Below are positions 13,301 through 58,000 of a stretch of DNA of 64,000 nt, one piece after another. Origin of the DNA: Asterias rubens (lineage: Eukaryota); contig NC_047067.1 in NCBI RefSeq assembly GCF_902459465.1, positions 62,001 through 126,000 of the forward strand, given 5' to 3'. Within the stretch, counting starts at the first letter, position 1, and each line of letters opens with the position of its first letter. The translations under genes were made by a program, and so were the position numbers. Below the pieces are notes generated by a model that saw nothing but the letters and a program-made list of their open reading frames with translations, was not told the origin of the DNA and did not search any database.

Positions 13301-16300
13301 ATCTCGATTTTGTATGCTAAAAATGAGTAGGGAATGAAGTTCAATGATTTTCAGTTTATTTTAATTGATAGCAATTGGGCTACATACGTGGAACTAAATG
13401 TAGAGAGAGATACTTCATTCATTCACATTATTTACAAACGGGTTCCGCCGAATAGAGTGGGGACAAGTTCAAAAGAACTCTTTCGCCACCCACCCCCTCA
13501 TTTCACAATAGACATGATATTTAGATTAAGGAAAACACCCAACACTAACCTTTTTGACGAGTATTGTCAAGCCCTGATACTTGTACGGTTTGGAGAAGTC
13601 AACAAAACGTGCTCGCTCGTTAGTGATGGTCAGAGGGGCCATTATCATGTCTGCTTTACCGTCAAGTATTTCGCCGATCATTCCATTCCATCGCTTCTCT
13701 GTGCCGTTGATCTTGGGAAATAAAACAAACACTATGATACAAAATAATTCGTCTTTGTTAAACTCAATTTAGTTGTTTTAACGTTCTCCTTGGTATGTAC
13801 AAATCATGAAACAGAACCCCTTCTCCAGGACAGCATACAAAGCCATAACCCAGGAAGTCATTAAGACGTGTACAGCATTTGTAAAGGCGCACAAATTCTG
13901 CTAAAACAACATTCAAAGATTATCATGTGGAAGGAAAAGAAATTGTGAACAGGTACCTGCAGGTGTGTGTCTTCAGTTGCTGCTGAATAATGAGATGTTC
14001 CCCGAGATTTTCAGGAAGTAAATTCAAGAGCATGGGGTGCTGTGCTTGAAAAAGACCCCGTTGCCAACATCATAGCTCAATAGCATTACACGTTGCCAAA
14101 CACTGGCATTACACGTTGCCAACTTACACGTTGCAAACACCATATATAGCTCAATAACATTTACACGTTGCCAACACATTAGCTCCAAAGCATTACGTTG
14201 CCAACACCAAAGCTCAATAGCATTACACGTTGCAAACACATTAGCTCAAAAGCATTACGTTGCCAACCCCATAGCTCAATAGCATTACACGTTGCCAACA
14301 CCGTAGCTCAAAAGCATTACATGTTGCCAACACCGTAGCTCAAAAGCATTACACGTTGCCAACACTGGCATTACACGTTGCCAACTTACACGTTGCCAAC
14401 ACCGTAGCTCAAAGCATTACCCGTTGCCAACCCCATAGCTCAATAGCATTACGTTGCCAACACCATAGCTCAATAGCATTACACGTTGCCAACACCATAG
14501 CTCAAAAGCATTACACGTTGCCAACACCAGCATTACACGTTGGCAACTTACACGTTGCCAACACCATATTAAGCTCAATAGCATTACACGTTGCCAACAC
14601 CGTAGCTCAATAGCATTACACGTTGCCAACAACATAGCTCAATAGCATTACACGTTGCCAACACATGAGCTCAATAGCATTACGTTGCCAACACCGTAGC
14701 TCAATAGCATTACACGTTGCCAACACCGTAGCTCAAAAGCATTACACGTTGCCAACACCGTAGCTCAATAGCATTACACGTTGCCAACACATTAGCTCAA
14801 AAGCATTACGTTGCCAACACCGTAGCTCAATAGCATTACACGTTGCCAACACCGTAGCTCAATAGCATTACGTTGCCAACACCATAGCTCAATAGCATTA
14901 CACGTTGCCAACACATTAGCTCAAAAGCATTACGTTGCCAACACCGTAGCTCAATAGCATTACACGTTGCCAACACCGTAGCTCAATAGCATTACGTTGC
15001 CAACACCGTAGCTCAATAGCATTACACGTTGCCAACACCATAGCTCAAAAGCATTACACGTTGCCAAACACTATGGTGCAAAAGCATAACACGTTGCCAA
15101 CTTATACGTTGCCATCACCGGAGTGACAACATAGCTCAAAAGCCATAGCTGGATAGCATTACACATTGCCAACACCATAGCGCAAAAAAAACCCAAACAT
15201 GTTTACAAAGGTGTATACGATGTAAAAGCCACAAACGACAACCAATACCTTACCTTTTCGTAATTTCCAAACTGGTTGTCATAGACGCTATGTAGGTCAA
15301 AGGTGAAGTTTAACTCTTTGGAGAGTGAGTTTAAGAGATCAATGCAGAAACCTGAGCAGCACTGCCAGAGACCTAGATGTGGATTTTTTAAATAACACTC
15401 AAAATATAACTAATTTAGTTGAAATTCATATTTCGGACCATGCTATCAAAAGGGTTTATTACAAGGGGTGGATCACGATAATGAGTTTGACAGGGGCGTG
15501 CCGTGGAGGGGCGGGGCGTTGCCTCGCGCCCCTACTGCTATAACGGGAAAAGTAGGCCTAAGATAAGTCTATAAATTAAAAATACAAGAAATGTTTCAGA
15601 GCTGTCCTCCTTTTGTTGCCCGACTAAAATAAATTATCGCATCATTGAAAGCACGTGGCTCGGACCGGGGCTCGGTCATGCTGTATGGGGTCCTTTATGA
15701 AACAGGGTTTGTGCTTTGGCTCTCCGGCTTGGAATCCGTCAAAAGCCCCCCCCCCCCCCGCCAAAAAAAATACACGCTTTCAAGGAGACCGTCAAGCCAC
15801 CTATCGCATCGCTTATGAGGAATTCGCACTTCAATGGATCTATCAGACAAATCTTAAATAGTCCTTTATCTTTTTATCCGAATTTCAATGTTACAATATG
15901 CGGGAACTAAGGTGGAGGTTTCAGAGAAAACCCAGTGTCTTTAGATATAGTCATTAGGTTTACGGTAACATTACCGCAAACCTTTCCATTACCCAGTGTC
16001 TTCACGATACTAAATTCTTAACCAAAGAAAACAAACAAAGTATTTGAATTCGACACAGAGGGAGCGCGACCGTTGGGCATATAGATGTGTGTTTGTAAAG
16101 TATTTATGCCGTGTTCGAATTAGAGTCTAGGGCTATGGCTACAACTGTTGCTCAGGACGTCATGAATTTCAACACATAAAGACCCAATAGTCCAACCGTA
16201 GTCATGAGCTGTAGTCGCCTTATTGGACGCAGTCTGACTTACTTCCGTTTGCTGCTAAGCATGGAACTGAATCATTCCCAACGCATTTTTTGGTAACTGG

Positions 16301-19300: not shown

Positions 19301-22300
19301 ACCGGGGATGACCCAGGGAAGCTAAACGAACGCACCCAAACATACGAAGATGCATAAAGACGACCGAAGTGCAAGCTGGCCATCATCTTTCACCTCGGAC
19401 CAATCATAACACAAGGAAAGCTTACGTCACAGCACGTTTATCCAATGAAAGCATTGTGCCTGTAAGACCGGTGCCTGTATTTTATCCGCAAGGACCAGTC
19501 TACGCGATTCCCTGCTCAGCGTAATGTCCAATTACGAATCTTACCTTGAATCTGTGGTAATCCACCATGCGTTTCCTGAACGTGCTGAGAATTGAACGGC
19601 CATCTTGGTCACTGCTAGTTATAATAACCACACTGCTCCATTCAAAATGCTCCACAATATCTGCCCATACAATGGCCTGATGGGAGTAGGCTGGTACCGT
19701 ACGGAGATACGATTTGTGGATGTGCTGTTTACCAATGGAGGGAGGAAACATAGTTGAAATGGGTGGATATATAAGTGACGATATTGAAACTAGGTATTAT
19801 GCAGTATAGATCACAACGAGGACAATGAAGAATGTTTGAGTCACGACAAGAAGTGTTTAAACAATCTTAGGTGCATTTGCTTATTTAAGATGCATACGCA
19901 CTAGCAGAGAGTCCTTGTTAAAAGGAAACGGCTGCAGATTTGATTCAGGAAGGTATACAAAATAAAGTCATGTAAACAATAAGAACGGACATATTGATCA
20001 ACACCTATATGAATATAAAGCGCATTACAATAAATAAAACATTTTTAAAGTCATGTAAACAATAAGAACAGACATATTGATCAACACCTATATGAATATA
20101 AAGCGCATTACAATATATAAAACATTTTTAAAGAAAAATAAATACCCAAAACAGATAAAAAAGGAACTAAATGAGTAAAGTAAACAAATTGTTTTTTAAA
20201 TTTGGTTAAAATACAAAAGTTAAGATGATTCTCCAATACAAAGATGGAGATTATTCCATAGTTTTGGAGCGGCGTACACAAATGCCCGATCACCCAGGGT
20301 AGCCTTTAAATTTCTTGATGGGTATGAACAAATAATTAGCATAAAGCTTGTGCGCACTAAAACATATTTTGTTTGCAAAATGGGTTAAAATTTCGCCTTT
20401 TGTCTTAGGGCTAATGGTGACGTAACGCATGCGTGTGTGCGTCTGCCTAGTGCATGCACAACTGTATGGCGTTTGTGACAGGTGAATGTAATCAGCACGT
20501 TTCATGATCAAGGCTGACTGAAAAGATATGGAGGTCGTTCAAACAAGTAAAGTCAGAAGGATTGTGAGAGATAAGATGCATAGGATTGGAGGAATCGAAC
20601 AATGAAAAAAGGTTCATGAAATTGCCACGACGAAAAAAAGTAACTGTATTTGACAGATTGATTTAAAACGCTTTATATCTGATGATGAATCTTAGCAGTT
20701 TTTCTGTAGAAATAAAAAATACCTTATCAAGAAATAAAATCGTTAGAGATCATACAAAATGTTCGAAGTGTAAGTCTTGTGTTGACTTTAAAGGAACACA
20801 GTGCCTTGGATCGGACGAGTTGGTCTATAAAAAGCGTCTGTAACCGTTTTTTAAAATGCATATGGTTGGAAAGATGTTTTAAAAGTAGAATACAATGATC
20901 CACACAAGTTTGCCTCGAAATTACGTGGTTTTCCTTTTACTTTGCGAACTAACACGGTCGGCCATTTATGGGAGTCAAAAATTTGACTCCCATAAATGGC
21001 CGACCGTGTTAGTCGACGAGGTAAAAGGAAAACCGTGCAATTTCGAGGCATGTTTGTGTGGATCATTGTATTCTACTTTTACAACATCTTTCTACCCACA
21101 TGCATTTATAACAAACGGTTACAAACGCTTTTTGTATACCAACTCGACCGATCCAAGGCAACGTGTTCCTTTTATATTTAACTAAAACTTCAACGTCCGT
21201 ATCATGAGCAAAACCATAATAACACTATTCGTTTGACAAACTGGGTATCTGTGAATGGACATCGTGAGAGAGCCTGATTTCCAGAACGGTTATGTCCACG
21301 CAGGAAGAATATTTATTTATTTTATTTTATTTTAATTCTTCGGACAAAACAATAAAACAAGCACAGGCCGTCCAGGGAAGGTAAAAGTAAAAAGTAAAAA
21401 AAAAAAAAGAATGTCATCAAAAAAAGATGTGCCCTCCCATGCCTAGCTCATAAAAAGTTCACATTTATATACTATACATTAAACACTTTAAAATATTCCA
21501 TGATTGGAAGACACAATCTGTGAAACAAATCTGACAGAAACGCTTCTCAGATTCAAATTTCGGGGGATGAATTCTGATATCTTTTTCCATAACCACAATA
21601 TTCGAAGTGAAATTATTTTTAAAATGCTTCATACTATAAATAAACGGCTTATTTGCCATTAATTGCCATACATTTTAAGAGAGATTGCCGAACTAAGGCA
21701 TGAGGTCTGCATTCGTTATGATAATAATTAATGCTGTGTTATGCTGAAATCGGGGTCTGAAAATTACATATCGTTCAAACGCAATTTATAGACAAACCAC
21801 CAATTACCCGCGGGTATGTCGCCACGTTTTAATACGTTCAGAATTATGTAGACGAATTCATGAATATTAACAGTATAATAGTGTGTTCCTCAATACACAA
21901 ATACCTTGCGTGAAGATGGCTTTAGTGGGATGTTCTGTACAACTGAGCTCGTCTATACCGAGTTGATTTTCCAGGAATGGGAATTAAGGCAATTCAAGTA
22001 ACTAAACATAATAATTATACATAATGATCATTTGAAATAGGCCTATTCATACACACATCATTATTAATGCCAATTGAGTTCTTGTTGCGTAACACAGATT
22101 AAAATAATTTCGGTTAAAACAAAACGTTACCTGCCGCATGGAACAATACTGTATACTTTATTTAGCATTCAAGAAACGGTTATAATATAGCATTCGTGAT
22201 GCTTGTAATACAAATACCTTGGTTCCAGACGGGATGTAACAAAATTGAAGAACCTCCAAAATTAAGTTCACCAATCCACTAACAACATCCTACTATTACT

Positions 22301-25300
22301 ACTTTAATAACGATTACAAATAATTACACCATATTCGTTTCTCCTTGGTCTTATTCTAGTTGTTGTGTAATACTCTGCTTCTTAATTCATTTTCAATTAA
22401 GACACATCCTGCTTTGTCTGTGTGCATCTATGATCATAAGTGACCGGTACAGACCGTGATTATCGTTGCCCCAAGCGAGAGGAAGATGATGCTCCTTCTA
22501 TACAGAAGCCTATACTGTGAAGCAAGAGATGCAGATGGACAAATAGAGGACAATATATGCCCCGATGGCTCCGGCGAGAAACAGCGGGAATACGAAATGA
22601 GGAGACTGTAAGATCGTGCAATAGAATGCCTACTTCCTCATCAGTATGAAGCTAAGGATGAACATAGAGATAAGGACAAGCAGTTCGGGGAACGTAATGG
22701 TTGTCCGTCGTATTAAACAGTCTCAGCAAATATTGTGAAGGGTATCAATGACATGTATGCCTACAGTAAGGCGCCGTTTTAAATTTATATATTTTGGAGG
22801 GGGGATGTCATGTCGATGCAATTCATTATTTGAAATAGTTGTCTAATTTTTTTTTCTTTTCGAGTACCACCATTAATAACTATAAGCGATACGTTGTCAA
22901 TTCATTCATAATACCAAACACTGAGTATAAGTGCTGAACGATTTAAAGCCATCGGACACTTTCGGTACAGATTTTTTTTTTTTAAGTTCACAGATTTACA
23001 AATAACTTACAGGGTTTACAGAAGGTAATGGTGACAGACTTCTCTTGAAATATTATTCCATGAAATGCTTATACTTTTTGAGAAAACATAAAAACAATAT
23101 AAATTCTCGATATCGAGAATTACGTATTTATTTTAAACACATGTCATGACGCGGCGAAACGTGCGGAAACAAGGGTGAGTTTTCCCTTTATTTTCTCCCG
23201 ACTCCGATGACCGATTGAACCTAAATTTTCACAGGTTTGTTATTTTATATAGAAGTTGTGATACACAAAGTGTGAGCCTTGGACATCACTGTTTACCGAA
23301 AGTGTCCAATGGCTTTAAAGCAAATAATGCGAAATCTTGACTTGATAATCACATTATATAATTTATAAAGGTCATGTTGCTATTGTTGGACATCAACTGG
23401 ATGAATCCACACTTCAGCTTTTTGTACACGACGTATACTATCACGTTAACAAGATCCATTCCTCAATGTGTTTATCCCTCCTCAGTCATCGGCCAAGAGG
23501 GCTCGAGGGGAGAGCAAGGGGGAAGACTGTCTTCTCAAACAAGGGCAAAGCAGTGGGAGAATTGGGAACAGCTACAGGACATTTTTTAACGTCGTTTTTT
23601 CATGGTTTTTTGTCTGAATCTTTGTTAAAAGTCACAAGAATCATTGGATATTAATTAATAATTAGGCCCTAGTATACCATTCACTCGACTTAGATTTGGT
23701 TTGCTTAAATTAATGCGAATAGCCAAGTCACTTCTTGTGAAATCGGTCTCGTATGAAAAGGTCTGTTGATAAAGTTCGAACACCAAGCTTTAGCAATATA
23801 TTTAAATTTATATCGGCATTTAATTTCAAAGATGGCCAGCCTTTGAGTTCAATGTGATGTCTCAAGTTACCAATATTTTTGTATAAATCACACAGTTAAT
23901 AAATAATCAAATTAACGATCGATCAAACATCACAATGACATGAACGTAAGAACCGTCAGATATCTTTTCCGATGACTGCATGATCATAGGCAAAGTATAC
24001 CTTTGGTTTTCGGAACCGCTCGACTGTAGCTTAACCCTAATATGAAATTAATGTACATCATGTTATATTAATGTCATTTCATTCGGTAGCGTTTTTGAGA
24101 TTTTGCCGGAAATTAATTGAACAAAAAGACGGGAAATTGTACGATTTCACGAGGCACTAAAATTCATCTTGACTTTAGAATGGGATGTTTGTATTGTGAC
24201 TCAGAGTGCTGCAAGATTTGCTGCAAAACAAAAGGGCTTTTTAATAAGGACTAACCTTATCCGAGAAGATGCACTCCCTAGCTGATATTCCAATCACGGG
24301 GATACCATAGAATCCACAGGTATAAGAAACAGATACCGATGACATGTACAACTCAGGAGAGTAACCCGAGATGACAGCGTATACCTGAATAATTATATTG
24401 ACCAACAAAAAAGACAAACATTCATTAAAACCGTGACATTGTGACAAATAACCTGAATATATTGACCCCAACAGAAAGACATTCATTAAAACCATTACAT
24501 TTTGACAAAAGGACAGCGTATTCCCAAATATTGACCCAAATAAAGAAAGATCTTCATTAAAACCATGACATTGTGACAAGAGGACAGCGTATACCTGAAT
24601 ATATTGACCCCAAAAGAAAGACATTCATTAAAACCATGACATTGTGACAAGAGGACAGCGTATACCTGAATATATTGACCCCAAAAGAAAGACATTCATT
24701 AAAACCATGACATTGTGACATGAGGACAGCGTATACCTGAATATATTGACCCCAAAAGAAAGACATTCATTAAAACCGTGACATGCGGACAGCGTATACC
24801 TGAATATATTGACCCCAAAAGAAAGACATTCATTAAAACTATGACATTGTGACAAGAGGACAGCGTATACCTGAATATATTGACCCCAAAAGAAAGACAT
24901 TCATTAAAACCATGACATTGTGACATGAGGACAGCGTATACCTGAATATATTGACCCCAAAAGAAAGACATTCATTAAAACCATGACATGGTGACAAGAG
25001 GACATCGTACCCAAATATTGACCCAAATAAAGAAAGATCTTCATTAAAACCATGACATTGTGACAAGAGGACATCGAACACCTGAATATTATTATTGACC
25101 CCAAAAGAAATACATCATTAAAACCATGACATGGTGACAAGAGGACAGCGTATACGTAAATATAGACCCAAACAAGAAAGACATTCATGACATCTGGGAC
25201 CGGCCTAATATCATGGAACGATCTGCTTTTGCCCATACCGTGTGTGTGTATTAGGGGCACCGTAAGTGCAGAATCGCTGAACGTGAATGTTTAGTTCTTA

Positions 25301-26336
25301 GGGAAATCGAGTCATGGGCAGTCATTAGCAGAACCACCTGAACTCATTTCTAGAGATTATCACTTCATATACACGGTGTACTTTAAGCAGTCTGTTTTTA
25401 AATGAACGGTCTTGATCGTATAACTCCAAACATGGTCCAAAAACTCCCTCTGCAATGTAAAATGTCATAATTTATAGGGTGATGTCACACTAGAAGGTGA
25501 AAAATCCTTCTTTTGTAAATTGGAAAGCAAAAGTGCGTTGGTCAATATAGGCGGTTGGATTTGAAGTCGGTGTTTTTACCCATTTCATTTGAACTGACAA
25601 TAAGTAAGGTAATGATAAAAAGTGTGAACCTGTGTTTGACTATCGTTTCTCTGGTCCGGATTCCGGATCGCACTCATTATTATTGAATGCAGCTATAGGT
25701 ACATGAGACCCAGATCTTTGTGAGCCTGGCCATGAATCATCCAAAAAATATAGTTTTGCAGATTGGGGTTAATCCGGAAGACGGATCTGGCCAAAATGAA
25801 GACTGTCGTCCGGGTACAGCCGCAGATTGGGGTTAATCCGGAAAACGGATCTGGTCGAAATGAAGGCTGTGGTCCTGGTAAAGAATTGTGTGATTTATAA
25901 GGGTTCCTGACTGGGCGAAATGAAGGCTATCGTCCGGACCACAGATTGGGGTTAATCCGGAAAACGGATCTGGTCGAAATGGAGGCTGTGGTCCGGGTAC
26001 AGTCACTGTGTATTCAGGGTTACTTACCTCATTCGGAATAATCTTTTCACACACTCTGATTGCTGACTGGATGGGATTGTTGGTCATAATAATGGAGGTA
26101 ACATTGAGCCTGTAGTTTCCCGGTAGGATCCGGCTGTTCTCATTCACCTCCCGGACCGCTACCTGTAAGGTCTCCATGTCTTCTACTGTGTTCATCATAG
26201 CACCGATGTGGATCTCACAGATATCTGTCCCCGTGGTGGCGGGAAGGACACGGGCGACGTGGAAGAGGAACGAGAAGGCCAAGGAGATGACAAAGTAGCG
26301 ATGTCCAAGTACGATACGATGGCTGTGTGGCATCAT
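7978..26336 (-). CDS. grin1: Ionotropic glutamate receptor, NMDA type, GluN1 subunit; 16 coding exons, 899 aa (whole-gene span)
   Basis: All 16 exons join with GT-AG sites in consistent phase (sum 2700 nt). GluN1 hallmarks: [46 protein letters not shown] (N-site), [32 protein letters not shown]. Confidence 0.95.
8744..8889 (-). CDS. grin1: grin1 coding exon 15 (M4 and C0)
   Basis: GVFLLVAGG...[13 protein letters not shown]; acceptor gtgcag|, donor AGG|gttagt (an alternative donor lies 6 nt upstream). Confidence 0.9.
9911..9990 (+). mobile_element. tRNA-like SINE head or tRNA pseudogene relic
   Basis: Degenerate A-box (agttggtagagcg) and B-box (ggttgatcgtccc); no intact cloverleaf. Confidence 0.4.
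10101..10230 (-). CDS. grin1: grin1 coding exon 14
   Basis: [12 protein letters not shown]...WITSQQC...TLGLSSMG; tttcag| acceptor, G|gtaggt donor. Confidence 0.9.
10292..10428. repeat. Compound (CAA/CAG)n microsatellite in grin1 intron 13
   Basis: Directly visible run of caa/cag/cat triplets. Confidence 0.9.
10485..10626 (-). CDS. grin1: grin1 coding exon 13
   Basis: [38 protein letters not shown]; ttttag| acceptor, |gtgagc donor. Confidence 0.95.
11075..11456. mobile_element. Fully palindromic ~380-bp MITE, TTAA/AGG...CCT termini (Kolobok/T2-like)
   Basis: Terminal arms aggaacacgttgcctt.gatcggacgagttggt / accaactcgtccgatccaaggcaacgtgttcct; the arms stay complementary to the centre; TTAA at the right end. 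Confidence 0.85.
11849..12006 (-). CDS. grin1: grin1 coding exon 12
   Basis: [53 protein letters not shown]; GG|gtaagc donor. Confidence 0.95.
12352..12500 (-). CDS. grin1: grin1 coding exon 11 (M3)
   Basis: [49 protein letters not shown]. Confidence 0.95.
13024..13246 (-). CDS. grin1: grin1 coding exon 10 (M1-M2)
   Basis: [13 protein letters not shown]...YLLDRFSPF...[16 protein letters not shown]. Confidence 0.95.
13550..13711 (-). CDS. grin1: grin1 coding exon 9
   Basis: [47 protein letters not shown]. Confidence 0.95.
14056..15182. repeat. ~30-32-bp minisatellite, ~1.1 kb, in grin1 intron 8
   Basis: Tandem variants of catagctcaatagcattacacgttgccaacac with no unique spacers. Confidence 0.95.
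15254..15372 (-). CDS. grin1: grin1 coding exon 8
   Basis: [39 protein letters not shown] (absent from the ORF track, found by manual translation). Confidence 0.95.
16243..16348 (-). CDS. grin1: grin1 coding exon 7
   Basis: [35 protein letters not shown]; ctcttag| acceptor, A|gtaagt donor. Confidence 0.9.
16954..17185 (-). CDS. grin1: grin1 coding exon 6
   Basis: [25 protein letters not shown]...PVWPGG...PTHLR. Confidence 0.95.
17633..17932 (-). CDS. grin1: grin1 coding exon 5
   Basis: [28 protein letters not shown]...APEGVIG...[10 protein letters not shown]...SDC. Confidence 0.95.
18384..18484 (-). CDS. grin1: grin1 coding exon 4
   Basis: [33 protein letters not shown]; phase fits both neighbours. 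Confidence 0.9.
19084..19338. mobile_element. MITE with 29-bp TIRs (GGGTGC start; PIF/Harbinger-like, tentative)
   Basis: tgggtgcattcttttagcttccctgtgtc vs the reverse complement of the right end, tgggtgcgttcgtttagcttccctgggtc (3 mismatches); no clean TSD. Confidence 0.7.
19545..19724 (-). CDS. grin1: grin1 coding exon 3
   Basis: [43 protein letters not shown]. Confidence 0.95.
19963..20114. repeat. Direct duplication, period 83 bp
   Basis: taaagtcatgtaaacaataagaac..aagcgcattacaata occurs twice, at 19963 and 20046. Confidence 0.9.
20792..21170. mobile_element. Second copy of the palindromic Kolobok/T2-like MITE
   Basis: TTAA|aggaacac..ccttggatcggacgagttggt ... ccaaggcaacgtgttcct; same family as 11075. 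Confidence 0.85.
22947..23314. mobile_element. MITE with TTAA TSD and agccat(c/t)ggacactttcggta TIRs (Kolobok-like)
   Basis: TTAA at 22943-22946 and 23315-23318; TIRs near-perfect; an inverted partial copy lies at ~27465-27650. Confidence 0.85.
24256..24384 (-). CDS. grin1: grin1 coding exon 2
   Basis: [43 protein letters not shown]; attcag| acceptor, AAG|gttagt donor. Confidence 0.9.
24372..25175. repeat. ~71-bp minisatellite (~12 units) built from the grin1 exon-2 acceptor region
   Basis: Unit ggacagcgtatacctgaatatattgaccccaaaagaaagacattcattaaaaccatgacattgtgacaaga; overlaps the first 12 nt of exon 2. Confidence 0.95.
25758..26003. repeat. Three imperfect copies of a ~60-bp unit just inside grin1 intron 1
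   Basis: cagattggggttaatccggaa.acggatctgg at ~25759, ~25823 and ~25942. Confidence 0.85.
26028..26336 (-). CDS. grin1: grin1 coding exon 1 (signal peptide and start of the amino-terminal domain)
   Basis: ATG at 26336, hydrophobic signal-like stretch, IHIGAM..., [15 protein letters not shown]; GAG|gtaagt donor; upstream acceptor gtgcag| at 26419. Confidence 0.9.
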
Positions 26337-26792
26337 TTTCTTAATCTGTTTGATTTGTTTTGCCGATTTTAGTGTATCTAACTTGTTCTTCTTTTCCCGC
26401 TTGGTTCAACTGTACGATCCTGCACATATAACAAGCGATAGCTCATTGATGCAAACTCAGCATGGTAAAATAGAGTTCCACAACTGACGGGAGCTATTAC
26501 CCCATGTTCGGAGGAGCATTTCAATTCATTAAAAAACATGATAATTTGATATCACAAACTACACTTTTTTTTTTCTTTTTTTTTTTTACTAAGCGCAATT
26601 ATGCGTTACAATATTCGAATAAATTTAACATGGAAAGCTTGAAGAATTTATTGAAAGGAATTCAAACCATGACAACGATGAGTTGAGATTTGTAGTGAGA
26701 GTGGATGACAGTGTAAATAATGGACATGGTTAAACATGGCGTCCCACGCGTCATCCATGAAACATTATAGAGAAAAATCACAATTTTCTTAC

Positions 26793-27090
26793 CTGAACAC
26801 AATGTCAGTCGTCTTCAATCAATTCTGATCATCCCGTGAAGGTGCTCATCGAAACAGATCGCCCGTAAAAGAGCCTACAGTGGCCCGACCATTAGCTATG
26901 CCACCGGTATGAAAAGACACGGCCGTTCTTATTGACGAGCTGTCCGCTTGCCGGAGACCAGCCGTAACTGCTCCCTTGCACTCTTGGCATTTGACATGCG
27001 TAATACAATCGATGCAGATTTCATCAGCGGCGCATAGTAGGACGTTATCAACAACCTCGTAGTGCGAGATGTTGGTGATCACATGCTGCT
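26793..27090 (-). other. Probable 5'-UTR exon of grin1
   Basis: Acceptor ccctttacag|cag near 27090 and strong donor CAG|gtaaga at 26793/26792, upstream of the coding-exon-1 acceptor. Confidence 0.45.
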
Positions 27091-41974: not shown

Positions 41975-42440
41975 CTGGATTTGACATGCTGGCACTCCAC
42001 AAACTAAGATCAGTGTTTGACATGCTGGCACTTCACAAACTAAGATCAGTGTTTGACATGCTGGCACTCCACAAACTAAGATCAGTGTTTGACCATGCTG
42101 GCACTCCACAAACTAATTGACATGCTGGCACTCCACAAACTAAGATCAGTGTTTGACATGCTGGCACTCCACAAACTAAGATCAGTGTTTGACCATGCTG
42201 GCACTCCACAAACTAAGATCAGTATTTGACATGCTGGCACTCCACAAACTAAGATCAGTGTTTAACCATGCTGGCACTCTACAAACTTAGATCAGTATTT
42301 GACATGCTGGCACTCCACAAACTAAGATCAGTGTTTGAAATGCTGGCATTCCACAAACTAAGATCAGTGTTTGACATGCTGGCACTCCACCAACTAAGAT
42401 CAGTGTTTGACATGCTGGCGCTCCACAAACTAAGATCAGT
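41975..42440. repeat. 36-bp minisatellite, ~13 copies
   Basis: Tandem atgctggcactccacaaactaagatcagtgtttgac. Confidence 0.95.
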
Positions 42441-45400
42441 AACCCTAATGTTAGCAGTCTCCTTACTCCCTAGTAGCAAGCTGTTCTTTGTTCATACCAA
42501 AATCATTTAAAAAATTACCTTTTAATCCTATTTTGTGATTTGGAACGTTTAAATACAATGTTTATAGGCCTTTATTGTAATGACACAATACAGAATTTTA
42601 AATGACTCTATTAAACTGGGAACAACTTGTGACAATTAGTTCACTTTACTGTTGACATTGCATTAGATGTTTGAGATTGGTGTCTATTTTGTTAACAGAC
42701 TGACCCAGTATTTACCATATCTCAACAACCACCCCTTCCTATCAACAAAATCATTTATAACAACAACTTGTCACAAAAGAAAATTATGCCAGCGCTGTCC
42801 CTTTTTCCAGCAGACCAGATTATTTTTAGTGCATTGACATTGAAGAGACGTCAGCTTGAAGTGCGGTGTGCAATTTGATGAATCCTAATGCATGACTGAT
42901 GTTCACTACCCGTGGTTCAGGCAGGGTGTAACCTGGCTGCAGTGAACAGACACACAACAAAAGCTGACAAGTTATCAGACTTTTAGGGTATAATCTTTAG
43001 AGATTGATCTGTATCTGTTAATCAATAGGTCATTAAAACCTAAACTGTCATTGTTTGGGGGTGGGGATTATAGATGCTACTGTATCTAGTCACCCACTGT
43101 GAGTTTCAGGCAGCGTGGCCTGGCCTGGGTTGGTGGTGGCCAGCCAGTGTACATAATTTAGACTCTTGCTTGTCATTATGGTTTATTTATTGGGGAAAAC
43201 CTTTGTACCTTGAAAGTTTGACAGTGTTGTTGTCTGTTTTACAATTGTTGCACATTCACATTAGATTCTCCGGACATAAGGGTTGAATCAATAGTGTGAA
43301 GGTTTTAAATGCATTGTAAAACACTTTCTTTGCTCATGTATTCTTGGAAGTTGATGGTTCATCATGGCAAACCATACTAGTTTCCATAGAAATATGCAAC
43401 AAATGCCCATCTACTATATGACTTACTTCCATACTTCCATGACCTCCATTTCAAGGGTAAACAAAAACTTCCGAACGCACTATCATTGCCATTCTGGCCA
43501 AATGTCAGTTGATTTGTCAACATTATTGTAGTGAAGTCGTCACAAAATAATAGAGCAGTGGTTTGATCCATCTTGCAATATTGCAAGCTACAGTATGCAT
43601 TTAGAATCAATGTGAGAACCCCCCCCCCCCCCCCACTTCCCCCAAACGACTGACTGCTAATTTGGGCCCATTTTCAAAGAGCTGCTGATAGTTTGCATTC
43701 CCCCTCCCCCCCCCCCCCCCCAACAAATGAGAAGTCCAATCATACAATATTTGCAGGAACTCTTCGGCTGAGCAGTTGTGATCGCCTTAGTATTTCAAGT
43801 TTCTCAGATCAACTGTGCCATTTTTATTGCTGTGCCTGGCACTTTTTGTTCTTTTAAACAAACTTACATTGCATGCCTTTTCTTGAAGCAATTTTTGTGA
43901 TAATAAGATTGATTTGGGTCTGTTTGTGATTGAACCTCCCTGGTGACCTTTCACCTCCCTGGTGACCTTTCACCATGGAATGGGACTATGCTATGACCGG
44001 TTGACCTAGCTTTCATTGTCAGTAGTTGCTGATAGATCCTTTCAGCAGATAGGTAATTTGGGCTCTGGAGATGTGCAACTTGATATTGCATTCTGAATAC
44101 ACTGTACTTGGTCTGGTTTCAAAACAAAGTGCAGCAGTAGCAATTATTGGAAATACAAATTGATTAGTCTCAGTCAAAAAGGTCACAGGTTAAAAGTTCT
44201 TCAGTGAAATAATCTACAGTGAAATAATCTTGCTGAAATACTATCATTTGATAGCCCCCAAATCAAGTGCTGCCTGACATACGATCTTTCTTTGATTTCA
44301 CTAAAATTATATGAAATTTTCACAGGTTTGTTGTATTATGGTATGTGGAAACTATCTAAAATGTGAATTAAGTTACTCATGAAAGAATAATATGTGAGTC
44401 TACATGTATTACATGAGCGGCACATGTATTACATGAGCGGCAAGTGGACATAGGGGTCAATATTCGAATAACAAAAAAAATAGTTTGGGTGACTACTGAG
44501 AAGCTGAACTGATGCGGCTTAAACATGTTCAAGTTGCAGGTATGCAAAGGCACTTTTGGTACATCAGCCACATTAACCTATAATGACCCCGAAGCACAGC
44601 CAAGGAGCATAAGTGTTTCATTTTTCCAAATGGACAAAAACCAGCAGAAAAAGCAGTCCAGAGAAAAAGATTTGTGGTATAAGAAAACCAATGCACAACT
44701 CCATTCATATAATAATGGCCTTATTGGAATTGAACCCGGGCCACAGTGGTAAGAGACAAGTGCTTTTAATAAAAGCTAGTCACATGCTACCATTCTCCCT
44801 ATCCCTGCACTAGCTGTTAACTACATGTATGTCATTTTCTGTTGTCATTTTTACTGTTATGCGCCCTCGAACAGGCTGGTCATGGAGAAAGCGCAATATA
44901 AAATCAATAGATTAATATTATTATTATTGCGGATGTGAACAGTTGTCATTTATTTCAACTTTGTCAGAATTGTCATTGATGTGCCATGTTTGAAATGGAC
45001 ACCAAGATTTAATGATTGCACAAGTAATGTGTTTACATACACCATCTCTGTTCGAGCATACTCCCTCCCCCATCCCCCCCCCCCTCCATCCAAATCGTAT
45101 CCTCGTTTGCTGTATTGGTACTCATCCATGGAACTAGACAAACACTTCAGCTCAGTCAAAAGCTAGCTAAAAGCTGGTTAAACTGCAGCTTCGCAAACTC
45201 TTCAAAACCCTCCCATGTGATATTAGGGCATCTAACATAGCACCCTGAAGCTATCAATGTCTTGACTGAACCAAAAAACAAACCAACAAGGCATATGTCA
45301 CGCTAACCCACTAAGTTTCAACAACTGTTTGCACAATATGTGGTCATACCAGAAACTTATATTGTGCATAACAGTGAGGCAGTGTAATTGATACAGATGC

Positions 45401-49010: not shown

Positions 49011-52000
49011 TCTCAAATATTCAGTACTGAAGTATGATGGTTCTTTTTGAATACCTGCAATTTGTATAATTAAAGCACCATGTTGCAATGTTTCAGTGTT
49101 TTCCTGTGGAGCTTTATACTTCTTTTGTATTTCTTCAATAGCTTTTTGCAACAAAGACCTTTCATGTTATTGGTGTCTTGATATTCTTATTGTTATTCTT
49201 TATTTGGCCATTAAACAATTACAAACAGACAGTATGTAAAGTGAATATACAAATAGAAAAGTAAATCAAAAAGCAACCTGAACTGTAAGAGCACAAGAAA
49301 TTTACAAAAAAAAACAACCCAAATGTGATGGCCAGGATCAACAAAAGTGTAACTAACATTGTAGCTTGAAGCCTTTGGAGCCAGTCACATAGGGAGGCAA
49401 AAACAATTCATACATGTATGATACTCTCTATGGAAAACTAAATGGAAATTTAGGATGAATATAATTTATAATCTGTATAAAGAAAGCACAACATTAAAAA
49501 AAATATGGAAGGTCAGCAAAGGTGGAATACAACATGGGCTATTCAGTAACTCAAAAAGGCTTCATAATATTCAGTCACTTTTAAGATTGAGAGCACTTTG
49601 CGAAAATTGACAAACCGTCTTTCAAATACCTTCCATTAGATTGTTTTTTTTGACACAGAATACTGGTTTGAATTAAGCCAAGGTGGGTCAAGGTAAGACG
49701 AGACTGGTAGCCTATTCATTAACTCAAAAGGCTTAATATTCAATCTTTTTGAAGCTTTAATGGAGGAGTTCTTTGTACAAACTGGAAATGTCTTTTGGTA
49801 GTTGCCTTCCAAAGTATTGGTCTTTTGATTTGGTTCCTTGCTCTATGGTCACACGTAATGGTCTGAATTGAGCCATGTTGGGTCAAGGGAGGTCAGTAAG
49901 GGCAAATGAGACTATTACAGTAACTTTCTGGCTGAACAATATTTAATCGATTTGAAACATCGCTAGATTAACGCCAATAAACCTGATGTGACCTTTTTTG
50001 TTCAGATCAGACCTGCGGTTGGGGAGTAGCTCATTTGTATCAAGTGTAATTAGTTGATACAGAAGGGTTTTCAGAGATGTGGCAGTCTTACACACCCTGG
50101 TTAGAATAGTGCGATTGTTAAGAACATGGTTCAGTGCTGATGGTTTTTTATTTACAAAAGCGTGAACGAGTTTTTAGACTGTATCAATTTATATCTACCA
50201 AATCAAATTTTGTTTATGGCTTTTTTTATCACTGATATGGCTGAAATGTGTATACAATGTTACTCAGCAACTCTTCCAGTTGGTTGTACAAAGACTGTGT
50301 TTATAAAAGTGTCTCTAATGCACCAAGCACCTATCCCTAGCATAAACGACAAAGTCCTATTTTGTTCTTGGGGAAAAATGTTGTCAGAGTAGAAGGTTAC
50401 AGTAGTTTTTTGTAATTCATGTACCTGTTTTATAATGTAACATTTTAAGCAAACCATACTAGCATTTAAAGGCAAAAAACAAAAAGCAAACAAACACCCC
50501 GGCGAACAAACAAAGACCAAATCCACCTGTGTTCGAACCATATCACAGATGAAAATCCACAGATCTATGAACATATGTTCATATAACCAAAAAAGAATGC
50601 AAGTCAACTGAATACTGGATTAGCACTGACAAACATCTGAATCAACTTTTTGTTAAGAAGACAATGAAGAAGTTTCAGTTTTAGATGTGGGAGGAAAATC
50701 CCTTCAGGGAAAACCCAAGCAGTCAGGTAGGGACTGAAAACCCCAATCATGCAATGCAAGGCAACGGTCCAGAATTGAGCCAGGGGTCGATTTCACAAAG
50801 AGTTAAGACTACTAGGACTACTAGGACTAGTCCTAGGAGATATACAAATTGCATGGATAACCTAAGTTAAGACGTGTAACTGGTCCTAACTGGAGATAAG
50901 ACTAGTCCTAACTCTTTGTTAAATCCACCCCATGGTCCACAGAGGTGAAAGGCAGAGCAAGAAATCACTGTGCCAACCTGACTACCTTCTAATGCATTTT
51001 CCAGACATTTTGCAGACTCGTTTGTGCAGAACCGCCATGCACCAACAAGTGAAGCAAGCATTATGCAACCCTCCGAAATCAAGAAGTTATAAACCCTACA
51101 AAATCCAGGTATAAACCCTCCAAAATCCAGGTATAAACCCTCCAAAATCCAGGTATAAACCCTCCAAAATCCAGGTATAAACCCTCCAAAATCCAGGTAT
51201 AAACCCTCCAAAATCCAGGAATAAACTCTCCAGAATCTGCTTTGGGATGATGTTTGATTGCAGAGGGTTGAAAACTGCAGTCACAAATAAGAATGGATTA
51301 TCACTGACTAGGCCAGGCAATAACAATCTGATCTAAGACTGTCCGTTACGGTGTCGAGTGATCATTGTTGAGTGGTAGATAGCGTAAGATTGAGCAAGGA
51401 GCAAATGCTATTGGGGGATTGTGCTTTTTCTATTGCTGCAGTATGTATGATCGAGAATAATCTTCCTGAGAACAAACAAACATTCGCTTAGCCATAGGTC
51501 CAGTTTGAAACCAGTAGTCTCCTCAGGATGGTGTACCACTGCCATGTGTCCTATGGTCTTGTAGATTTTCCCTAAAAATGCAAACCCTTTGTGTATAAAT
51601 CATCTGTCTAAAAAGTCTTTTTTTCTAATGTGCTGTATGTGGTTGATCCTGTATGAAAACCTTAATCTCAATTGTTATCTGGATTAACAGTTTTTCTCTT
51701 TGTGATCCTGATGTTATCTCATACTTCACCCAGAGTGATGTGCTGTTTATAAGGATAGATTACTGTAACAGTGAGAGGTTTAACCAATTGTCTTTTTGAT
51801 GCTCATCTTAAAGATTCAGCTGATTAGCATGATCTTGTCACTGACTAAGACCCCATCAAGGACACAGTCCTTATTGATCACGTCATATAATTAGATTTAT
51901 CTTGTCAAAGACAGCATTAGATTGATCTGATCAAGGCCAAAGATGGTAAGCCTTTGCTCATCTCTTTGTTGATATTAGTTGTTTTATTTTTACTTGAGTA

Positions 52001-55000: not shown

Positions 55001-58000
55001 ATTATTTTGTGATATGGATCTACATCTCAACTTCATAATTTGTGATATGGATCAATATCTTGTCTTCATCATCTCAATGATGATTAAATTACAAAAGTCA
55101 AAATGTTGAGAATCAATCAAGTTTGTTTCATCTCAGATCCATCGTCCCTCCTCAAGAAATTAATCACATGACATGCATGGTGTACAGTAAGATTTAAGTA
55201 ATATCTACATGGTCTGCTTCACTCTACTTACCTGTAGAGCGAATACTACAATTGCATTGATGGGGTGGGGTACTATGACTTCAAATCAGACCGTTGTTAC
55301 TGTTGAAACCGAGGCCTTAGTTGCTATAGATCTGTATCATACAGCAACAATTTTATAGAGTATTTACTTATCTATGACCCTACATTCATAAATACCCCAG
55401 ACAGTTTCGCTACACTCCTATTGGTGCAGAGCGTGTCACGTTGGGGGCTGTTTAAACGGTTGATAATGACAAGCTGGAGCTATTTATAATTGGCTGTACC
55501 TGTATAGTTCATTCTTTATTTTGACAATGTTCTTCTGTGTTGTTTAGCTTTGAGGGTATGAATGGGACCCTGCCCCCAGCTGTGCCTACATTGAAAGTCT
55601 TGAGTGGTCTTGGCAAGACATTTAACGGGTTAGTCCACATGGTGCAAGCAATCCTGATTCAGGTACTGTACAGTTAATTTGGGTTTTTATCAAATGGAAA
55701 TGGTGTGAGTTAAAACGAATAGAATACCTAAGTTAATCGGTCCTTTGTTCCTTAAAATAAGTTATGAATTAATCATAATTATGCTTGTTTATTATATAGC
55801 ACACTTATGTAGTAACTAGATCAAGGCGATTAACAACATTATTATCCTTGTTTATCGGGCATACTTTTAGACACTGCCAACTCCATGGGGAGCATACAAC
55901 CCAAATGTTAAGAGAAGCTAGGGAAGTTAAGAGAAGTACCTTGCCCAAGAATGAAGTGTCATGATCAGGAGTTTTAAAGTTAGATGGAATATATGTTTGT
56001 TGTTATTTTAACTTATTCTAGACCATCGTGAAAAGTATTCAAGATTCTGCCAGTGAATACAACATAAAAATTGCAGTCAACTCAGTGCATTGTTTGTCAG
56101 AGGATGGGAATGAGATGTGCCGGTTATTAGCAAAGGTGAGTGTACATGTAGTTGACTGCTTTTACTTGTTCCTTTCTGTATTATTCACATTCTCTTCATT
56201 CCCCTTATTTCCCCATACACTTGACTTATCTAATTATAGATTGGGAGGTCAGGTTGAAATGTCCATTCAAGAAAGCAACTCTTTTGATGTAACAATAGAT
56301 CAATGACCATTGCTCTTAAATGTTTGGTGATCACTCCTAAAAATTAGTGCCAATAAAAACTTAAGAATTATGAGAATCATTTCCTTTTGAAGTAATGTGG
56401 TTATAGAAAAATATATCAGTTTTTATCCCCAAAATATGAATCTGAGATACATTACGAATCATTCTTCCTGCTCTGGATTTGTAACAATCACATTTTGAAT
56501 CCAAATTTTCACAGGATAGTATTGTTGTTATGTTTTTACAGGATTAAAATAGTTGAATGGTTCCAAAAGGTAAATACTTTGCCTTGTATGAATAATGAAA
56601 TATTTGTTTTCTGAAAGGGCATTCATGATCATTTCTCGTTCCAATATGAATCAGTTCCCCTACTTGTGCTTTCAAGGCTCAGTAATCTCTGGTTGTGTAT
56701 TGGGTGCGAGTCTTTCTTTAACAAGTAGCGAAAAACATTGGCAGTCAGTGGATCAGCAAATTAGATTCCATATACACCCTCCCAAGGAAAATACCTGGGC
56801 AGGAAAACATTTTCTAATAATGAGTATTGACTTTTGTTTTCTTGTCACAGGAGGGCGCTATACAATCTCTTCTTGAACTCTGCCAGCAGGCATCTCTTAA
56901 TTCCATGAAGCCAGTTGCTCTAAGAACGGTGGCTAATTTATGCAATGTTGCCGAGGGAAGGCAAGAGCTAGAAAGAGTGAGCGAGAAACTTTGTGTTAAT
57001 TGACAAGTCTTAATCAACAAGTTTTACGTTTACCTAAATATGCATTGTTTCATATAACCTCAAGATGTCCAACCCATCTAAATCCAGCTGCATATTTTGT
57101 ACGATTTTGTTGGACTGTGAGGACAGCATTAAACTGATTATTTGTTGCAGGGTACCAGGCTTACCAGGAGCACCATCAGAGTCAAACTCATATTCAAATC
57201 CTCTAACATTATATTTTAATATTTCAACAAGTTTTACGTTTACTTAAATATGCATTGTTTCATATAACCTCAAGATGTCCAACCCATCTAAATCCAGCTG
57301 CATATTTTGTACGATTTTGTTGGAGTGTGAGGACAGCATTAAACTGATTATTTGTTGCAGGGTACCAGGCTTACCAGGAGCACCATCAGAGTCAAACTTA
57401 TATTCAAATTCTCTTACATTATATTTTAATATTTCAATTGTGCACATGATTATGTTGAAATTATGCAGGTATTACCAATTTATTTAACTGTGGTAAAGTG
57501 AGTTATGTACGACTGACTCTAAACCAAGGACACTGATTGGAAAGGTTTGACCTCCCTATAGTACACACCATACGCTGTTGCTTGACAACACAACATCAAC
57601 GATGGAACATCACTCAATTCCCCATTGCTTGATCTATTGAGTGAGAAAGTATCCTTTCATTCACTAAAGAGATTTGGGGTTGTAAAAATACCCTGTTTTG
57701 GGGTTTCTTATGACACAAGGAGACAACTATTGAACAACCAAACTATTTTACCGTATTATTCTTAATTTAATAAACAGTGGTACATATGTGTTTTTTAGCT
57801 GTGCAAAACAGTTTTTATGTAAAATGTATCTTAAAATTTGGTTGAATAGGCCTACTTGTAGTCAATAGGCCTATACTTGTAGGAACGTTGTAGTCTTTCT
57901 TGTCAAGTGATAATAGTTTCCCATAATAAAGAAAAGTTTGTTGAGATTTTAGGTCAAAATGTTTATTTCCACAAACTTCAGAATATTTTTAACTTTGTTT

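What the first reader, a model, noticed from the sequence alone, without database searches (positions are those of the whole stretch)
24372..25175. A minisatellite made of splice acceptors: decoy 3' splice-site array in front of grin1 exon 2
Seen: read on the minus strand, each 71-bp unit contains the pyrimidine-rich tract, the AG and the first 12 nt of exon 2 (..atattcag|GTATACGCTGTC, VYAV). Six perfect copies have exon-start positions 24594, 24665, 24736, 24799, 24870 and 24941; two more keep the AG (~24452, ~25081) and three have lost it. All lie upstream of the true acceptor (24384), so the spliceosome meets them first. All perfect copies except 24594 give a frameshift or premature stop. 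Inference: either strong exon definition rescues the real site, or array length tunes the fraction of productive GluN1 mRNA through NMD, i.e. a VNTR splicing rheostat.
Basis: partly seen in the sequence, partly recalled or inferred. Interest (0 to 1): 0.7.

Follow-up and report, generated by a model that had tools for sequence, protein, structure and literature searches.

The report
Silent splice-acceptor minisatellite in GluN1 intron
An intron of this marine invertebrate's NMDA-receptor (GluN1) gene ends in about eleven tandem 71-bp copies of its own intron-end-plus-exon-start. Assembled transcripts use only the last, true copy, so this is one more "mirage" minisatellite of a kind already known, not a shown splicing regulator.

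Summary
On the minus strand, a 71-bp tandem array (24385-25188) copies the last 59 nt of the intron plus the first 12 nt of a GluN1 exon. Six copies are identical to each other from -41 to +14 around the AG. Two more keep the AG and three have lost it. Only the copy at 24594 would stay in frame.

The regulatory reading is not supported. Transcript contigs from two studies join donor 26028 to the true acceptor 24384 at depths 104 and 20. No contig joins the donor to a decoy. Contigs cannot exclude rare, NMD-cleared forms, and two raw RNA runs had no reads on the gene.

- **Origin:** the array occurs only at this locus in the 417.6-Mb genome.
- **Age structure:** it has a young core (97-100% identical units) and old, decayed edges.
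- **Length variation:** an independent contig of the same species lacks exactly 487 nt, including all six perfect decoys, so the array probably varies in length.

This matches the "mirage" minisatellites of amphioxus and mirrors the human F7 intron-7 donor VNTR. Earlier notes of this scan report many such arrays elsewhere in this same genome.

Verdict: a new member of a known kind. It is most likely a neutral by-product of a minisatellite-rich genome, kept silent by exon definition.

The parts
26793..26829 (-). 3' end of an upstream 5'-UTR exon (donor ...TTCAG|gtaaga at 26793|26792)
   Evidence: The loose ends of the mRNA contigs of X1 and X7 map here with 1 mismatch. The sequence was read.
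26028..26419 (-). Acceptor cag|G at 26420|26419, ATG at 26336, donor GAG|gtaagt at 26028|26027.
   Evidence: The translation shows a signal-peptide-like start followed by GluN1 amino-terminal-domain sequence.
24385..26027 (-). Intron of 1,643 nt (GT..AG) that hosts the array
   Evidence: A joint skipping 1,643 nt, with ends CT..AC on the + strand, appears in contigs of X1 (depth 103.9) and X7 (depth 20.4).
25758..25999 (-). Second, unrelated 64-bp x 4 tandem repeat, 29 nt downstream of the donor. It does not include the splice site.
   Evidence: It occurs only at this locus in the genome. An X1 contig 'goes back 237' here, which suggests copy-number variation.
25001..25188 (-). Old upstream edge of the array. 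Units U0 (AG lost), U1 (AG kept, exon-like start 25081, exon part diverged) and U2 (AG lost).
   Evidence: 53-84% identity to core units.
24583..25000 (-). Young core of six units, U3-U8. They are identical from -41 to +14 around the AG, with exon-like starts at 24941, 24870, 24799, 24736, 24665 and 24594. U6 is a 63-nt unit.
   Evidence: 97-100% pairwise identity; 87-90% for U6, which has an 8-nt deletion. A 101-nt cyclic contig of X7 matches 24620-24720 with 0 mismatches.
24444..24582 (-). Old downstream edge. Units U9 (AG lost, 24523) and U10 (AG kept, 24452, exon-like part deleted).
24373..24443 (-). Last unit, U11, holding the true 3' splice site. It spans a candidate branch site (TTAAT), the pyrimidine tract, AG 24386-24385 and the first 12 nt of the exon.
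   Evidence: It is about 73% identical to core units.
24256..24384 (-). GluN1 exon of 129 nt (43 codons, VYAV...FSDK), with donor AAG|gttagt at 24256|24255
   Evidence: PDB search. The contig loose end at 24256 continues into the next exon, [10 protein letters not shown], near 19745.
24587..25073 (-). 487 nt (7 units, including all six perfect decoys) absent from an independent contig of the same species. This is the putative short allele.
   Evidence: L006 aligns 99.2% and 100% on either side of one clean 487-nt gap.

Best explanation
This is a 'mirage' minisatellite. A 71-bp piece spanning the intron/exon junction (59 nt of intron end plus 12 nt of exon start) was duplicated in tandem. It was then amplified by slippage or unequal exchange, so the intron now ends in about eleven extra copies of the gene's own 3' splice site. 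The array is spliced out with the intron. The spliceosome uses only the last copy, the one continuous with the real exon body and 129 nt from the next 5' splice site, which is what exon definition predicts. The perfect decoys sit 339-686 nt from that 5' splice site and are followed by intron-like sequence. Any leak would carry a premature stop, except use of 24594. The array most likely has no function of its own. It is a by-product of a minisatellite-rich genome and probably varies in length between individuals. Shown here: the anatomy, the single-locus origin, the young core with old edges, and use of the true junction in assembled mRNA. Inferred: exon definition as the reason, and neutrality.
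For: The array is unique to this locus in the 417.6-Mb genome, so it is a local duplication and not a dispersed element. Core units are 97-100% identical, edge units 53-87%, and three of the five edge decoys have lost the AG. This is the tandem-repeat turnover pattern described for amphioxus mirages (PMC3087553). Contigs of 1,997 nt (X1, organism A, depth 104) and 2,932 nt (X7, organism B, depth 20) join 26028 to 24384 and continue into the next exon. No joint reaches any decoy. The only array RNA seen is X7's 101-nt cyclic contig at depth 14.2. That equals the intron background (1.7-4.4) times the mean 31-mer multiplicity of 3.9. No database protein of 70-222 aa joins the upstream-exon peptide to array peptide. 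The window holds seven separate minisatellite arrays in 64 kb. An independent contig lacks exactly seven units. Precedents where copied splice sites stay silent are amphioxus Adh3, TnC, globin and PGBD5 mirages and human F7 intron 7.
Against: By local signals the perfect decoys are as good as the true site. They are identical from -11 to +12, share the same candidate branch site, and have a 10-nt pyrimidine run against 8 for the true site. Predicted accessibility is no worse. Some leak is therefore expected and could matter. Contigs drop rare variants, and NMD would remove most decoy products. The two raw RNA runs gave zero reads on the gene, so minor use is unbounded. Tissue and stage of the RNA runs are unknown. 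Exon definition is inferred, not tested.
Confidence: 0.75

Rival explanations
1. VNTR splicing rheostat. A fraction of pre-mRNAs splice to decoys, give frameshifted mRNAs that NMD removes, and array length therefore sets the yield of productive GluN1 mRNA.
For: Six decoys are locally equal to the true site and lie upstream of it. All but one give premature stops. A probable 4-unit versus 11-unit length difference exists. Nothing here excludes a low-level leak.
Against: No decoy junction appears in two transcriptome assemblies at depths 104 and 20. Array RNA depth is explained by intron background. No matching truncated product is in the protein database. In the known relatives of this structure, splicing is undisturbed. 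Earlier notes of this scan list the same kind of array in many unrelated genes of this genome (unverified), which points to a mutational process and not gene-specific regulation.
Confidence: 0.07
2. Sequential (recursive-like) splicing. Decoys are used, but each junction GAG|GTATAC re-creates a weak 5' splice site. This is re-spliced to the next acceptor until the true one is reached, leaving no trace in the mRNA.
For: Every unit has the juxtaposed AG|GTA arrangement typical of recursive sites. The final mRNA would look exactly as observed.
Against: GTATAC lacks the +5 G and the +4 A of a good 5' splice site. The gene's real donors here are GTAAGT, GTTAGT and GTAAGA. The intron is only 1,643 nt, whereas known recursive splicing serves very long introns (general knowledge). 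The same re-created site at the true junction would have to stay unused.
Confidence: 0.04
3. Source of a protein isoform. The in-frame decoy at 24594 adds 70 residues to the GluN1 amino-terminal domain in some tissue.
For: Use of 24594 gives an open, in-frame read-through.
Against: No such junction or protein was found. The inserted peptide is repeat-coded and has no similarity to GluN1. The putative short allele lacks this copy.
Confidence: 0.03
4. Assembly artefact: the array, or its length, is a mis-assembly.
For: Tandem arrays are error-prone, and an independent contig shows a shorter version.
Against: The units carry individual variants, including a 63-nt unit, decayed edges and a 205-nt higher order. 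The assembly is highly contiguous, with 150 contigs for 417.6 Mb. An unrelated RNA run holds a perfect 71+30-nt cyclic contig of the core.
Confidence: 0.03

Closest known systems
'Mirage' minisatellites of amphioxus (Adh3, troponin C, globins BflGb6/BflGb9, PGBD5). First named by Canestro et al. 2002, cited here second-hand from PMC3087553 and PMC3902484.
   Same: These are tandem repeats whose unit spans an exon-intron boundary. BflGb6 copies the 3' end of an intron plus the start of exon 2, as here. Many but not all units keep the AG/GT signal. Normal splicing is undisturbed. Haplotypes differ in copy number. The core is homogenised while the edges are excluded.
   Different: The phylum differs: earlier notes of this scan call the organism a sea star, which I did not verify, and in the searchable literature the term is used only for amphioxus. 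The unit is 71 bp, against 150-160 bp in BflGb6. The host gene is the essential synaptic receptor GluN1. The array length polymorphism rests on a single metagenome contig.
Human F7 intron-7 37-bp VNTR (PMC1557585)
   Same: It is a minisatellite whose terminal unit spans the exon/intron boundary, so the authentic splice site sits beside 5-9 identical pseudo-sites that stay silent. In both cases the copy adjoining the exon is the one used.
   Different: In F7 the copied sites are donors, and the authentic one is the first transcribed. Here they are acceptors, and the authentic one is the last transcribed, so a simple 5'-to-3' first-come scan cannot explain the choice.
NAGNAG and other tandem acceptors; decoy or pseudo 3' splice sites
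   Same: Several acceptor AGs compete for one donor.
   Different: NAGNAG sites lie 3 nt apart, share one branch site and are commonly both used (titles). Here whole 3' splice sites (branch site, pyrimidine tract, AG) are repeated every 71 nt, and only one is seen in use.
Recursive splice sites (AG|GTAAGT ratchet points in long introns; from general knowledge)
   Same: An AG sits immediately before GTA in every unit.
   Different: The re-created 5' site is weak (GTATAC), the intron is short at 1.6 kb, and no intermediates were tested.

Membership tests
Mirage minisatellite (exon-boundary tandem repeat) | Minisatellite-type tandem repeat with a unit of tens to about 160 bp | tested here: met
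   Period 71, 10.5 copies, score 1087.
Mirage minisatellite (exon-boundary tandem repeat) | The unit spans an intron-exon boundary, and the terminal unit is the authentic junction | tested here: met
   The unit is 59 nt of intron end plus 12 nt of exon start. The last unit carries the junction used in mRNA.
Mirage minisatellite (exon-boundary tandem repeat) | Many but not all copies keep the splice dinucleotide | tested here: met
   Eight of eleven decoy units keep the AG, six of them perfectly.
Mirage minisatellite (exon-boundary tandem repeat) | Regular splicing is not disturbed | tested here: met
   The only assembled junction is 26028|24384, in two studies. Rare forms are not excluded.
Mirage minisatellite (exon-boundary tandem repeat) | Copy number differs between haplotypes or individuals | tested here: inconclusive
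   One independent contig (L006) lacks exactly 487 nt, or 7 units, with flanks 99-100% identical. An assembler collapse through the 62-nt shared segment cannot be fully excluded.
Mirage minisatellite (exon-boundary tandem repeat) | Concerted evolution in the core, with edges excluded | tested here: met
   Core units 97-100% identical, edges 53-87%.
Alternative splicing coupled to NMD (regulated unproductive splicing) set by a VNTR | PTC-bearing isoforms from the alternative sites are detectable | tested here: inconclusive
   None in the contigs of X1 and X7, and none in the protein database. The raw RNA runs had no coverage, and contigs drop rare forms.
Alternative splicing coupled to NMD (regulated unproductive splicing) set by a VNTR | Isoform share or mRNA yield depends on repeat number and rises on NMD block | not testable with these tools
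   This needs genotyped individuals and NMD inhibition.
Recursive splice site | A strong 5' splice site is re-created directly after the AG (AG|GTRAGT) | tested here: not met
   The sequence is AG|GTATAC. The +4, +5 and +6 positions do not match.
Recursive splice site | Lies in a very long intron, with splicing intermediates observed | tested here: not met
   The intron is 1,643 nt. Intermediates are not testable here.
GluN1 (NMDA receptor subunit 1) gene | The exon sequence is homologous to the GluN1 amino-terminal domain | tested here: met
   All top PDB hits are GluN1, E 2e-6 for a 43-aa exon. Downstream motifs [14 protein letters not shown] and SGFGIG lie on the same strand. Relatives carry PF01094.

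The most novel reading that the evidence does not exclude
The array is a natural length polymorphism, with a short allele (4 decayed decoys) and a long allele (11 decoys, six perfect). Its leaky decoy use plus NMD would measurably lower productive GluN1 mRNA from the long allele. That would make it a cis-acting expression variant of an essential synaptic receptor, created purely by copying a splice acceptor.
Probability: 0.07. Interest if true: 0.7.

Novelty: new member of a known kind. Interest (0 to 1): 0.3.

Why it matters
As it stands, the finding is one more example of a described repeat type, in a new phylum and in a well-known neuronal gene. Its value is as a natural experiment in 3' splice-site choice. 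Six acceptors identical from -41 to +14 lie upstream of the real one, yet the last is chosen. This is the mirror image of the F7 donor array. It argues that sequence outside the copied unit (the exon body and the nearby 5' splice site) decides the choice, not local signal strength or order of transcription. If long and short alleles both exist, heterozygous animals would give a clean in vivo test of whether copied acceptors cost anything.

Tried and rejected
- **Raw RNA reads.** X18 and X19 (about 1.9 and 1.6 billion letters read) gave zero reads on the GluN1 exons, only on a 40-nt dispersed element at 23988-24027. There is therefore no quantitative junction count.
- **Dispersed repeat or transposon origin.** Rejected. 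The array, the 64-bp repeat and the unique middle of the intron each match only this locus in the genome.
- **RNA structure masking the decoys.** The predicted unpaired probabilities of branch site, pyrimidine tract and AG are similar for the decoys and the true site, so this gives no support.
- **Weaker pyrimidine tract in the decoys.** Rejected. The decoys have a 10-nt pyrimidine run against 8 for the true site, and equal pyrimidine content near the AG.
- **Intron born by tandem duplication of an AGGT-containing exon piece.** This was prompted by relatives whose gene has no intron here. I found no similarity between the upstream-exon end and the intron end, or between the exon start and the intron start (p 0.44-0.84). 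A distant relative (L011) has an intron at the identical position. The position is therefore probably old with losses elsewhere, not a fresh gain.
- **Rfam scan of 23700-26900.** Nothing significant.
- **Canestro et al. 2002.** The original mirage paper is not held in the library, so I cite it second-hand.
- **First attempt at a metagenome scan.** Failed because the alignment was too sparse, and was repeated with a closer alignment.

Full report
**What is there**

Read on the minus strand, the region is part of a GluN1 (NMDA receptor subunit 1) gene. The 129-nt exon at 24384..24256 translates to VYAV...FSDK. In a sequence search of the PDB it matches only GluN1 chains (E 2e-6, residues 65-106). 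The exon upstream ends GAG|gtaagt at 26028 and carries the start codon at 26336. GluN1 motifs continue downstream on the same strand.

Tandem Repeats Finder reports an array at 24451-25188 with period 71, 10.5 copies, 86% matches and score 1087. Put in register, there are twelve units (U0-U11). Each is 59 nt of intron end plus the first 12 nt of the exon. The twelfth unit (U11, 24373-24443) is the real intron/exon junction.

The 17-mer TTCAG|GTATACGCTGTC occurs seven times, against none in 100 shuffles. Six decoys are identical to each other from -41 to +14, with exon-like starts at 24941, 24870, 24799, 24736, 24665 and 24594. Two more keep the AG (25081, 24452) and three have lost it. Only 24594 would give an open in-frame product (+70 residues). 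All others meet a stop after 9-80 codons.

**Where it comes from**

The array, the separate 64-bp repeat next to the donor, and the unique middle of the intron each match only this locus in the 417.6-Mb, 150-contig genome. The array is therefore a local duplication of the junction, not a dispersed element.

Core units U3-U8 are 97-100% identical. Edge units are 53-87% identical to them. The true unit is about 73% identical to the core. A young homogenised core flanked by old decayed edges is the usual turnover pattern of tandem arrays. The same pattern is described for the amphioxus globin mirage.

The window holds seven independent minisatellite arrays in 64 kb, so the genome is rich in such repeats.

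**What the RNA shows**

I could lay reads once.

- **Spliced contigs.** Two contig sets behave as spliced mRNA. X1 (organism A) gave a 1,997-nt contig at depth 104. X7 (organism B, another study) gave a 2,932-nt contig at depth 20. Both skip exactly 1,643 nt with GT..AG ends, joining 26028 to 24384.
- **Neighbouring junctions.** Both contigs run on into the next exon ([10 protein letters not shown], near 19745). Both also run back into a 5' exon ending at 26793.
- **No decoy junction.** No joint to any decoy was reported.
- **Array RNA.** The only array sequence in RNA is X7's 101-nt contig at 24620-24720, with no mismatch and depth 14.2. Its length is 71+30, the length a perfect 71-nt cycle gives with 31-mers. 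Its depth equals the intron background (1.7-4.4) times the mean 31-mer multiplicity of 3.9. It is collapsed pre-mRNA or DNA background, and at the same time it is independent proof that the core exists.
- **Raw reads.** Two raw-read RNA runs had no reads on the gene, so minor isoforms are unbounded.
- **Protein database.** A search of 5.8 billion proteins with the array-plus-exon reading frame found no product that joins the upstream-exon peptide to array peptide.

**Length variation**

That search did return P0001. Its 1,525-nt contig (L006, an ENA metagenome assembly) is 99.2% and 100% identical to the window on either side of one clean 487-nt gap at 25073..24587.

This version has only U0, U1, a U2/U9-type unit, U10 and the true unit. 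All six perfect decoys are missing. The breakpoint lies in a 62-nt segment shared by U2 and U9, as unequal exchange would give. An assembler collapse is possible, but I judge it less likely.

X1 shows intron flanks at depth 3-4 but nothing on the core, which would fit a short allele there. That is weak evidence.

**Why the decoys are silent (inference)**

Local signals do not favour the true site. The decoys share its candidate branch site (TTAAT at about -37) and are identical to it from -11 to +12. They have a longer pyrimidine run, 10 nt against 8. Their predicted accessibility is no worse.

The difference lies outside the unit. Only the last copy is followed by the exon body and by a 5' splice site 129 nt away. 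The perfect decoys lie 339-686 nt from that site and are followed by more intron. I therefore commit to exon definition as the mechanism, with NMD clearing most leaks.

In human F7 intron 7, a 37-bp VNTR whose first unit spans the exon/intron boundary gives 5-9 identical donor pseudo-sites. These are functional but unused, and the exon-adjacent copy is chosen. Here the exon-adjacent copy is the last transcribed. A first-come scan cannot be the reason.

**Comparison with what is known**

[quoted passage not shown] They are also reported in amphioxus troponin C, globins and PGBD5. Many units keep the AG/GT signal, splicing is normal, and copy number differs between haplotypes.

All defining features I could test are met here. 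Length polymorphism is likely but rests on one contig. In the searchable literature the term is used only for amphioxus.

I reached the F7 case on my own. The word 'mirage' came from earlier notes of this scan, and I then checked the papers. Those notes list 13 'mirage' and 27 'decoy splice' findings in this same genome, which they call the common starfish. They are unverified AI notes. If right, this array is one instance of a genome-wide mutational habit, which argues against a gene-specific regulatory purpose.

**A side lead, followed and closed**

Relatives' genomic contigs have the two exons fused, with no intron at this spot. These are P0002-P0005, L007-L009 and L010. In L007-L009 and L010, whose DNA I could read, the next intron's donor is conserved.

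This raised the idea that the host intron is new and repeat-born. Two results speak against it. The intron ends show no similarity to the neighbouring exon ends. A more distant relative (L011) has an intron at exactly the same position, cag|GTT TAT GCA. The position is probably old, with losses in some lineages.

**Verdict**

The structure is a splice-acceptor mirage minisatellite and a new member of a known kind. The rheostat idea is unsupported but testable, thanks to the probable long and short alleles.

Noticed in passing
window 25758-25999: A 64-bp x 4 tandem repeat (71% matches) starts 29 nt downstream of the donor at 26028 without including it. It is unique to this locus. An X1 intron contig 'goes back 237' nt here, which suggests copy-number variation between individuals.
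   Followed up: partly
window 23988-24027: A 36-40-nt element in the next intron has very high RNA depth (about 500 to 1,970 in contigs, and the only place hit by raw reads of X18 and X19). It has several different flanks, so it is the core of a dispersed, widely transcribed repeat. It has no Rfam match.
   Followed up: partly
window 24385-26027 compared with L007:1227-1571, L010:4001-4306, L011:528-665: The intron hosting the array is absent from several related GluN1 genes, where the two exons are fused in genomic contigs. It is present at the identical codon boundary in a more distant relative (L011). This is an intron presence/absence difference among taxa that I could not name.
   Followed up: partly
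   Followed up: yes
window 14147-15101: A large 32/62/94-bp minisatellite (about 955 bp) lies in another GluN1 intron. Further arrays lie at 19963-20155, 41980-42441, 51067-51237 and 57014-57437. That makes seven arrays in 64 kb.
   Followed up: no
window 24337 and 26390: In X1's mRNA contig, 24337 (inside the GluN1 exon) reads T instead of C, and 26390 (5' UTR of the first coding exon) reads G instead of T, both at full depth. Both could serve as allele tags.
   Followed up: no
window 24437-25164 in run X1: X1 has intron contigs at depth 3-4 on both sides of the array but none on the array itself, and one contig ends at 25172, at the array's edge. This could mean a short or different array in that sample. 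Unexplained.
   Followed up: no
window 63080-63220: A run of 141 N (gap or masked).
   Followed up: no
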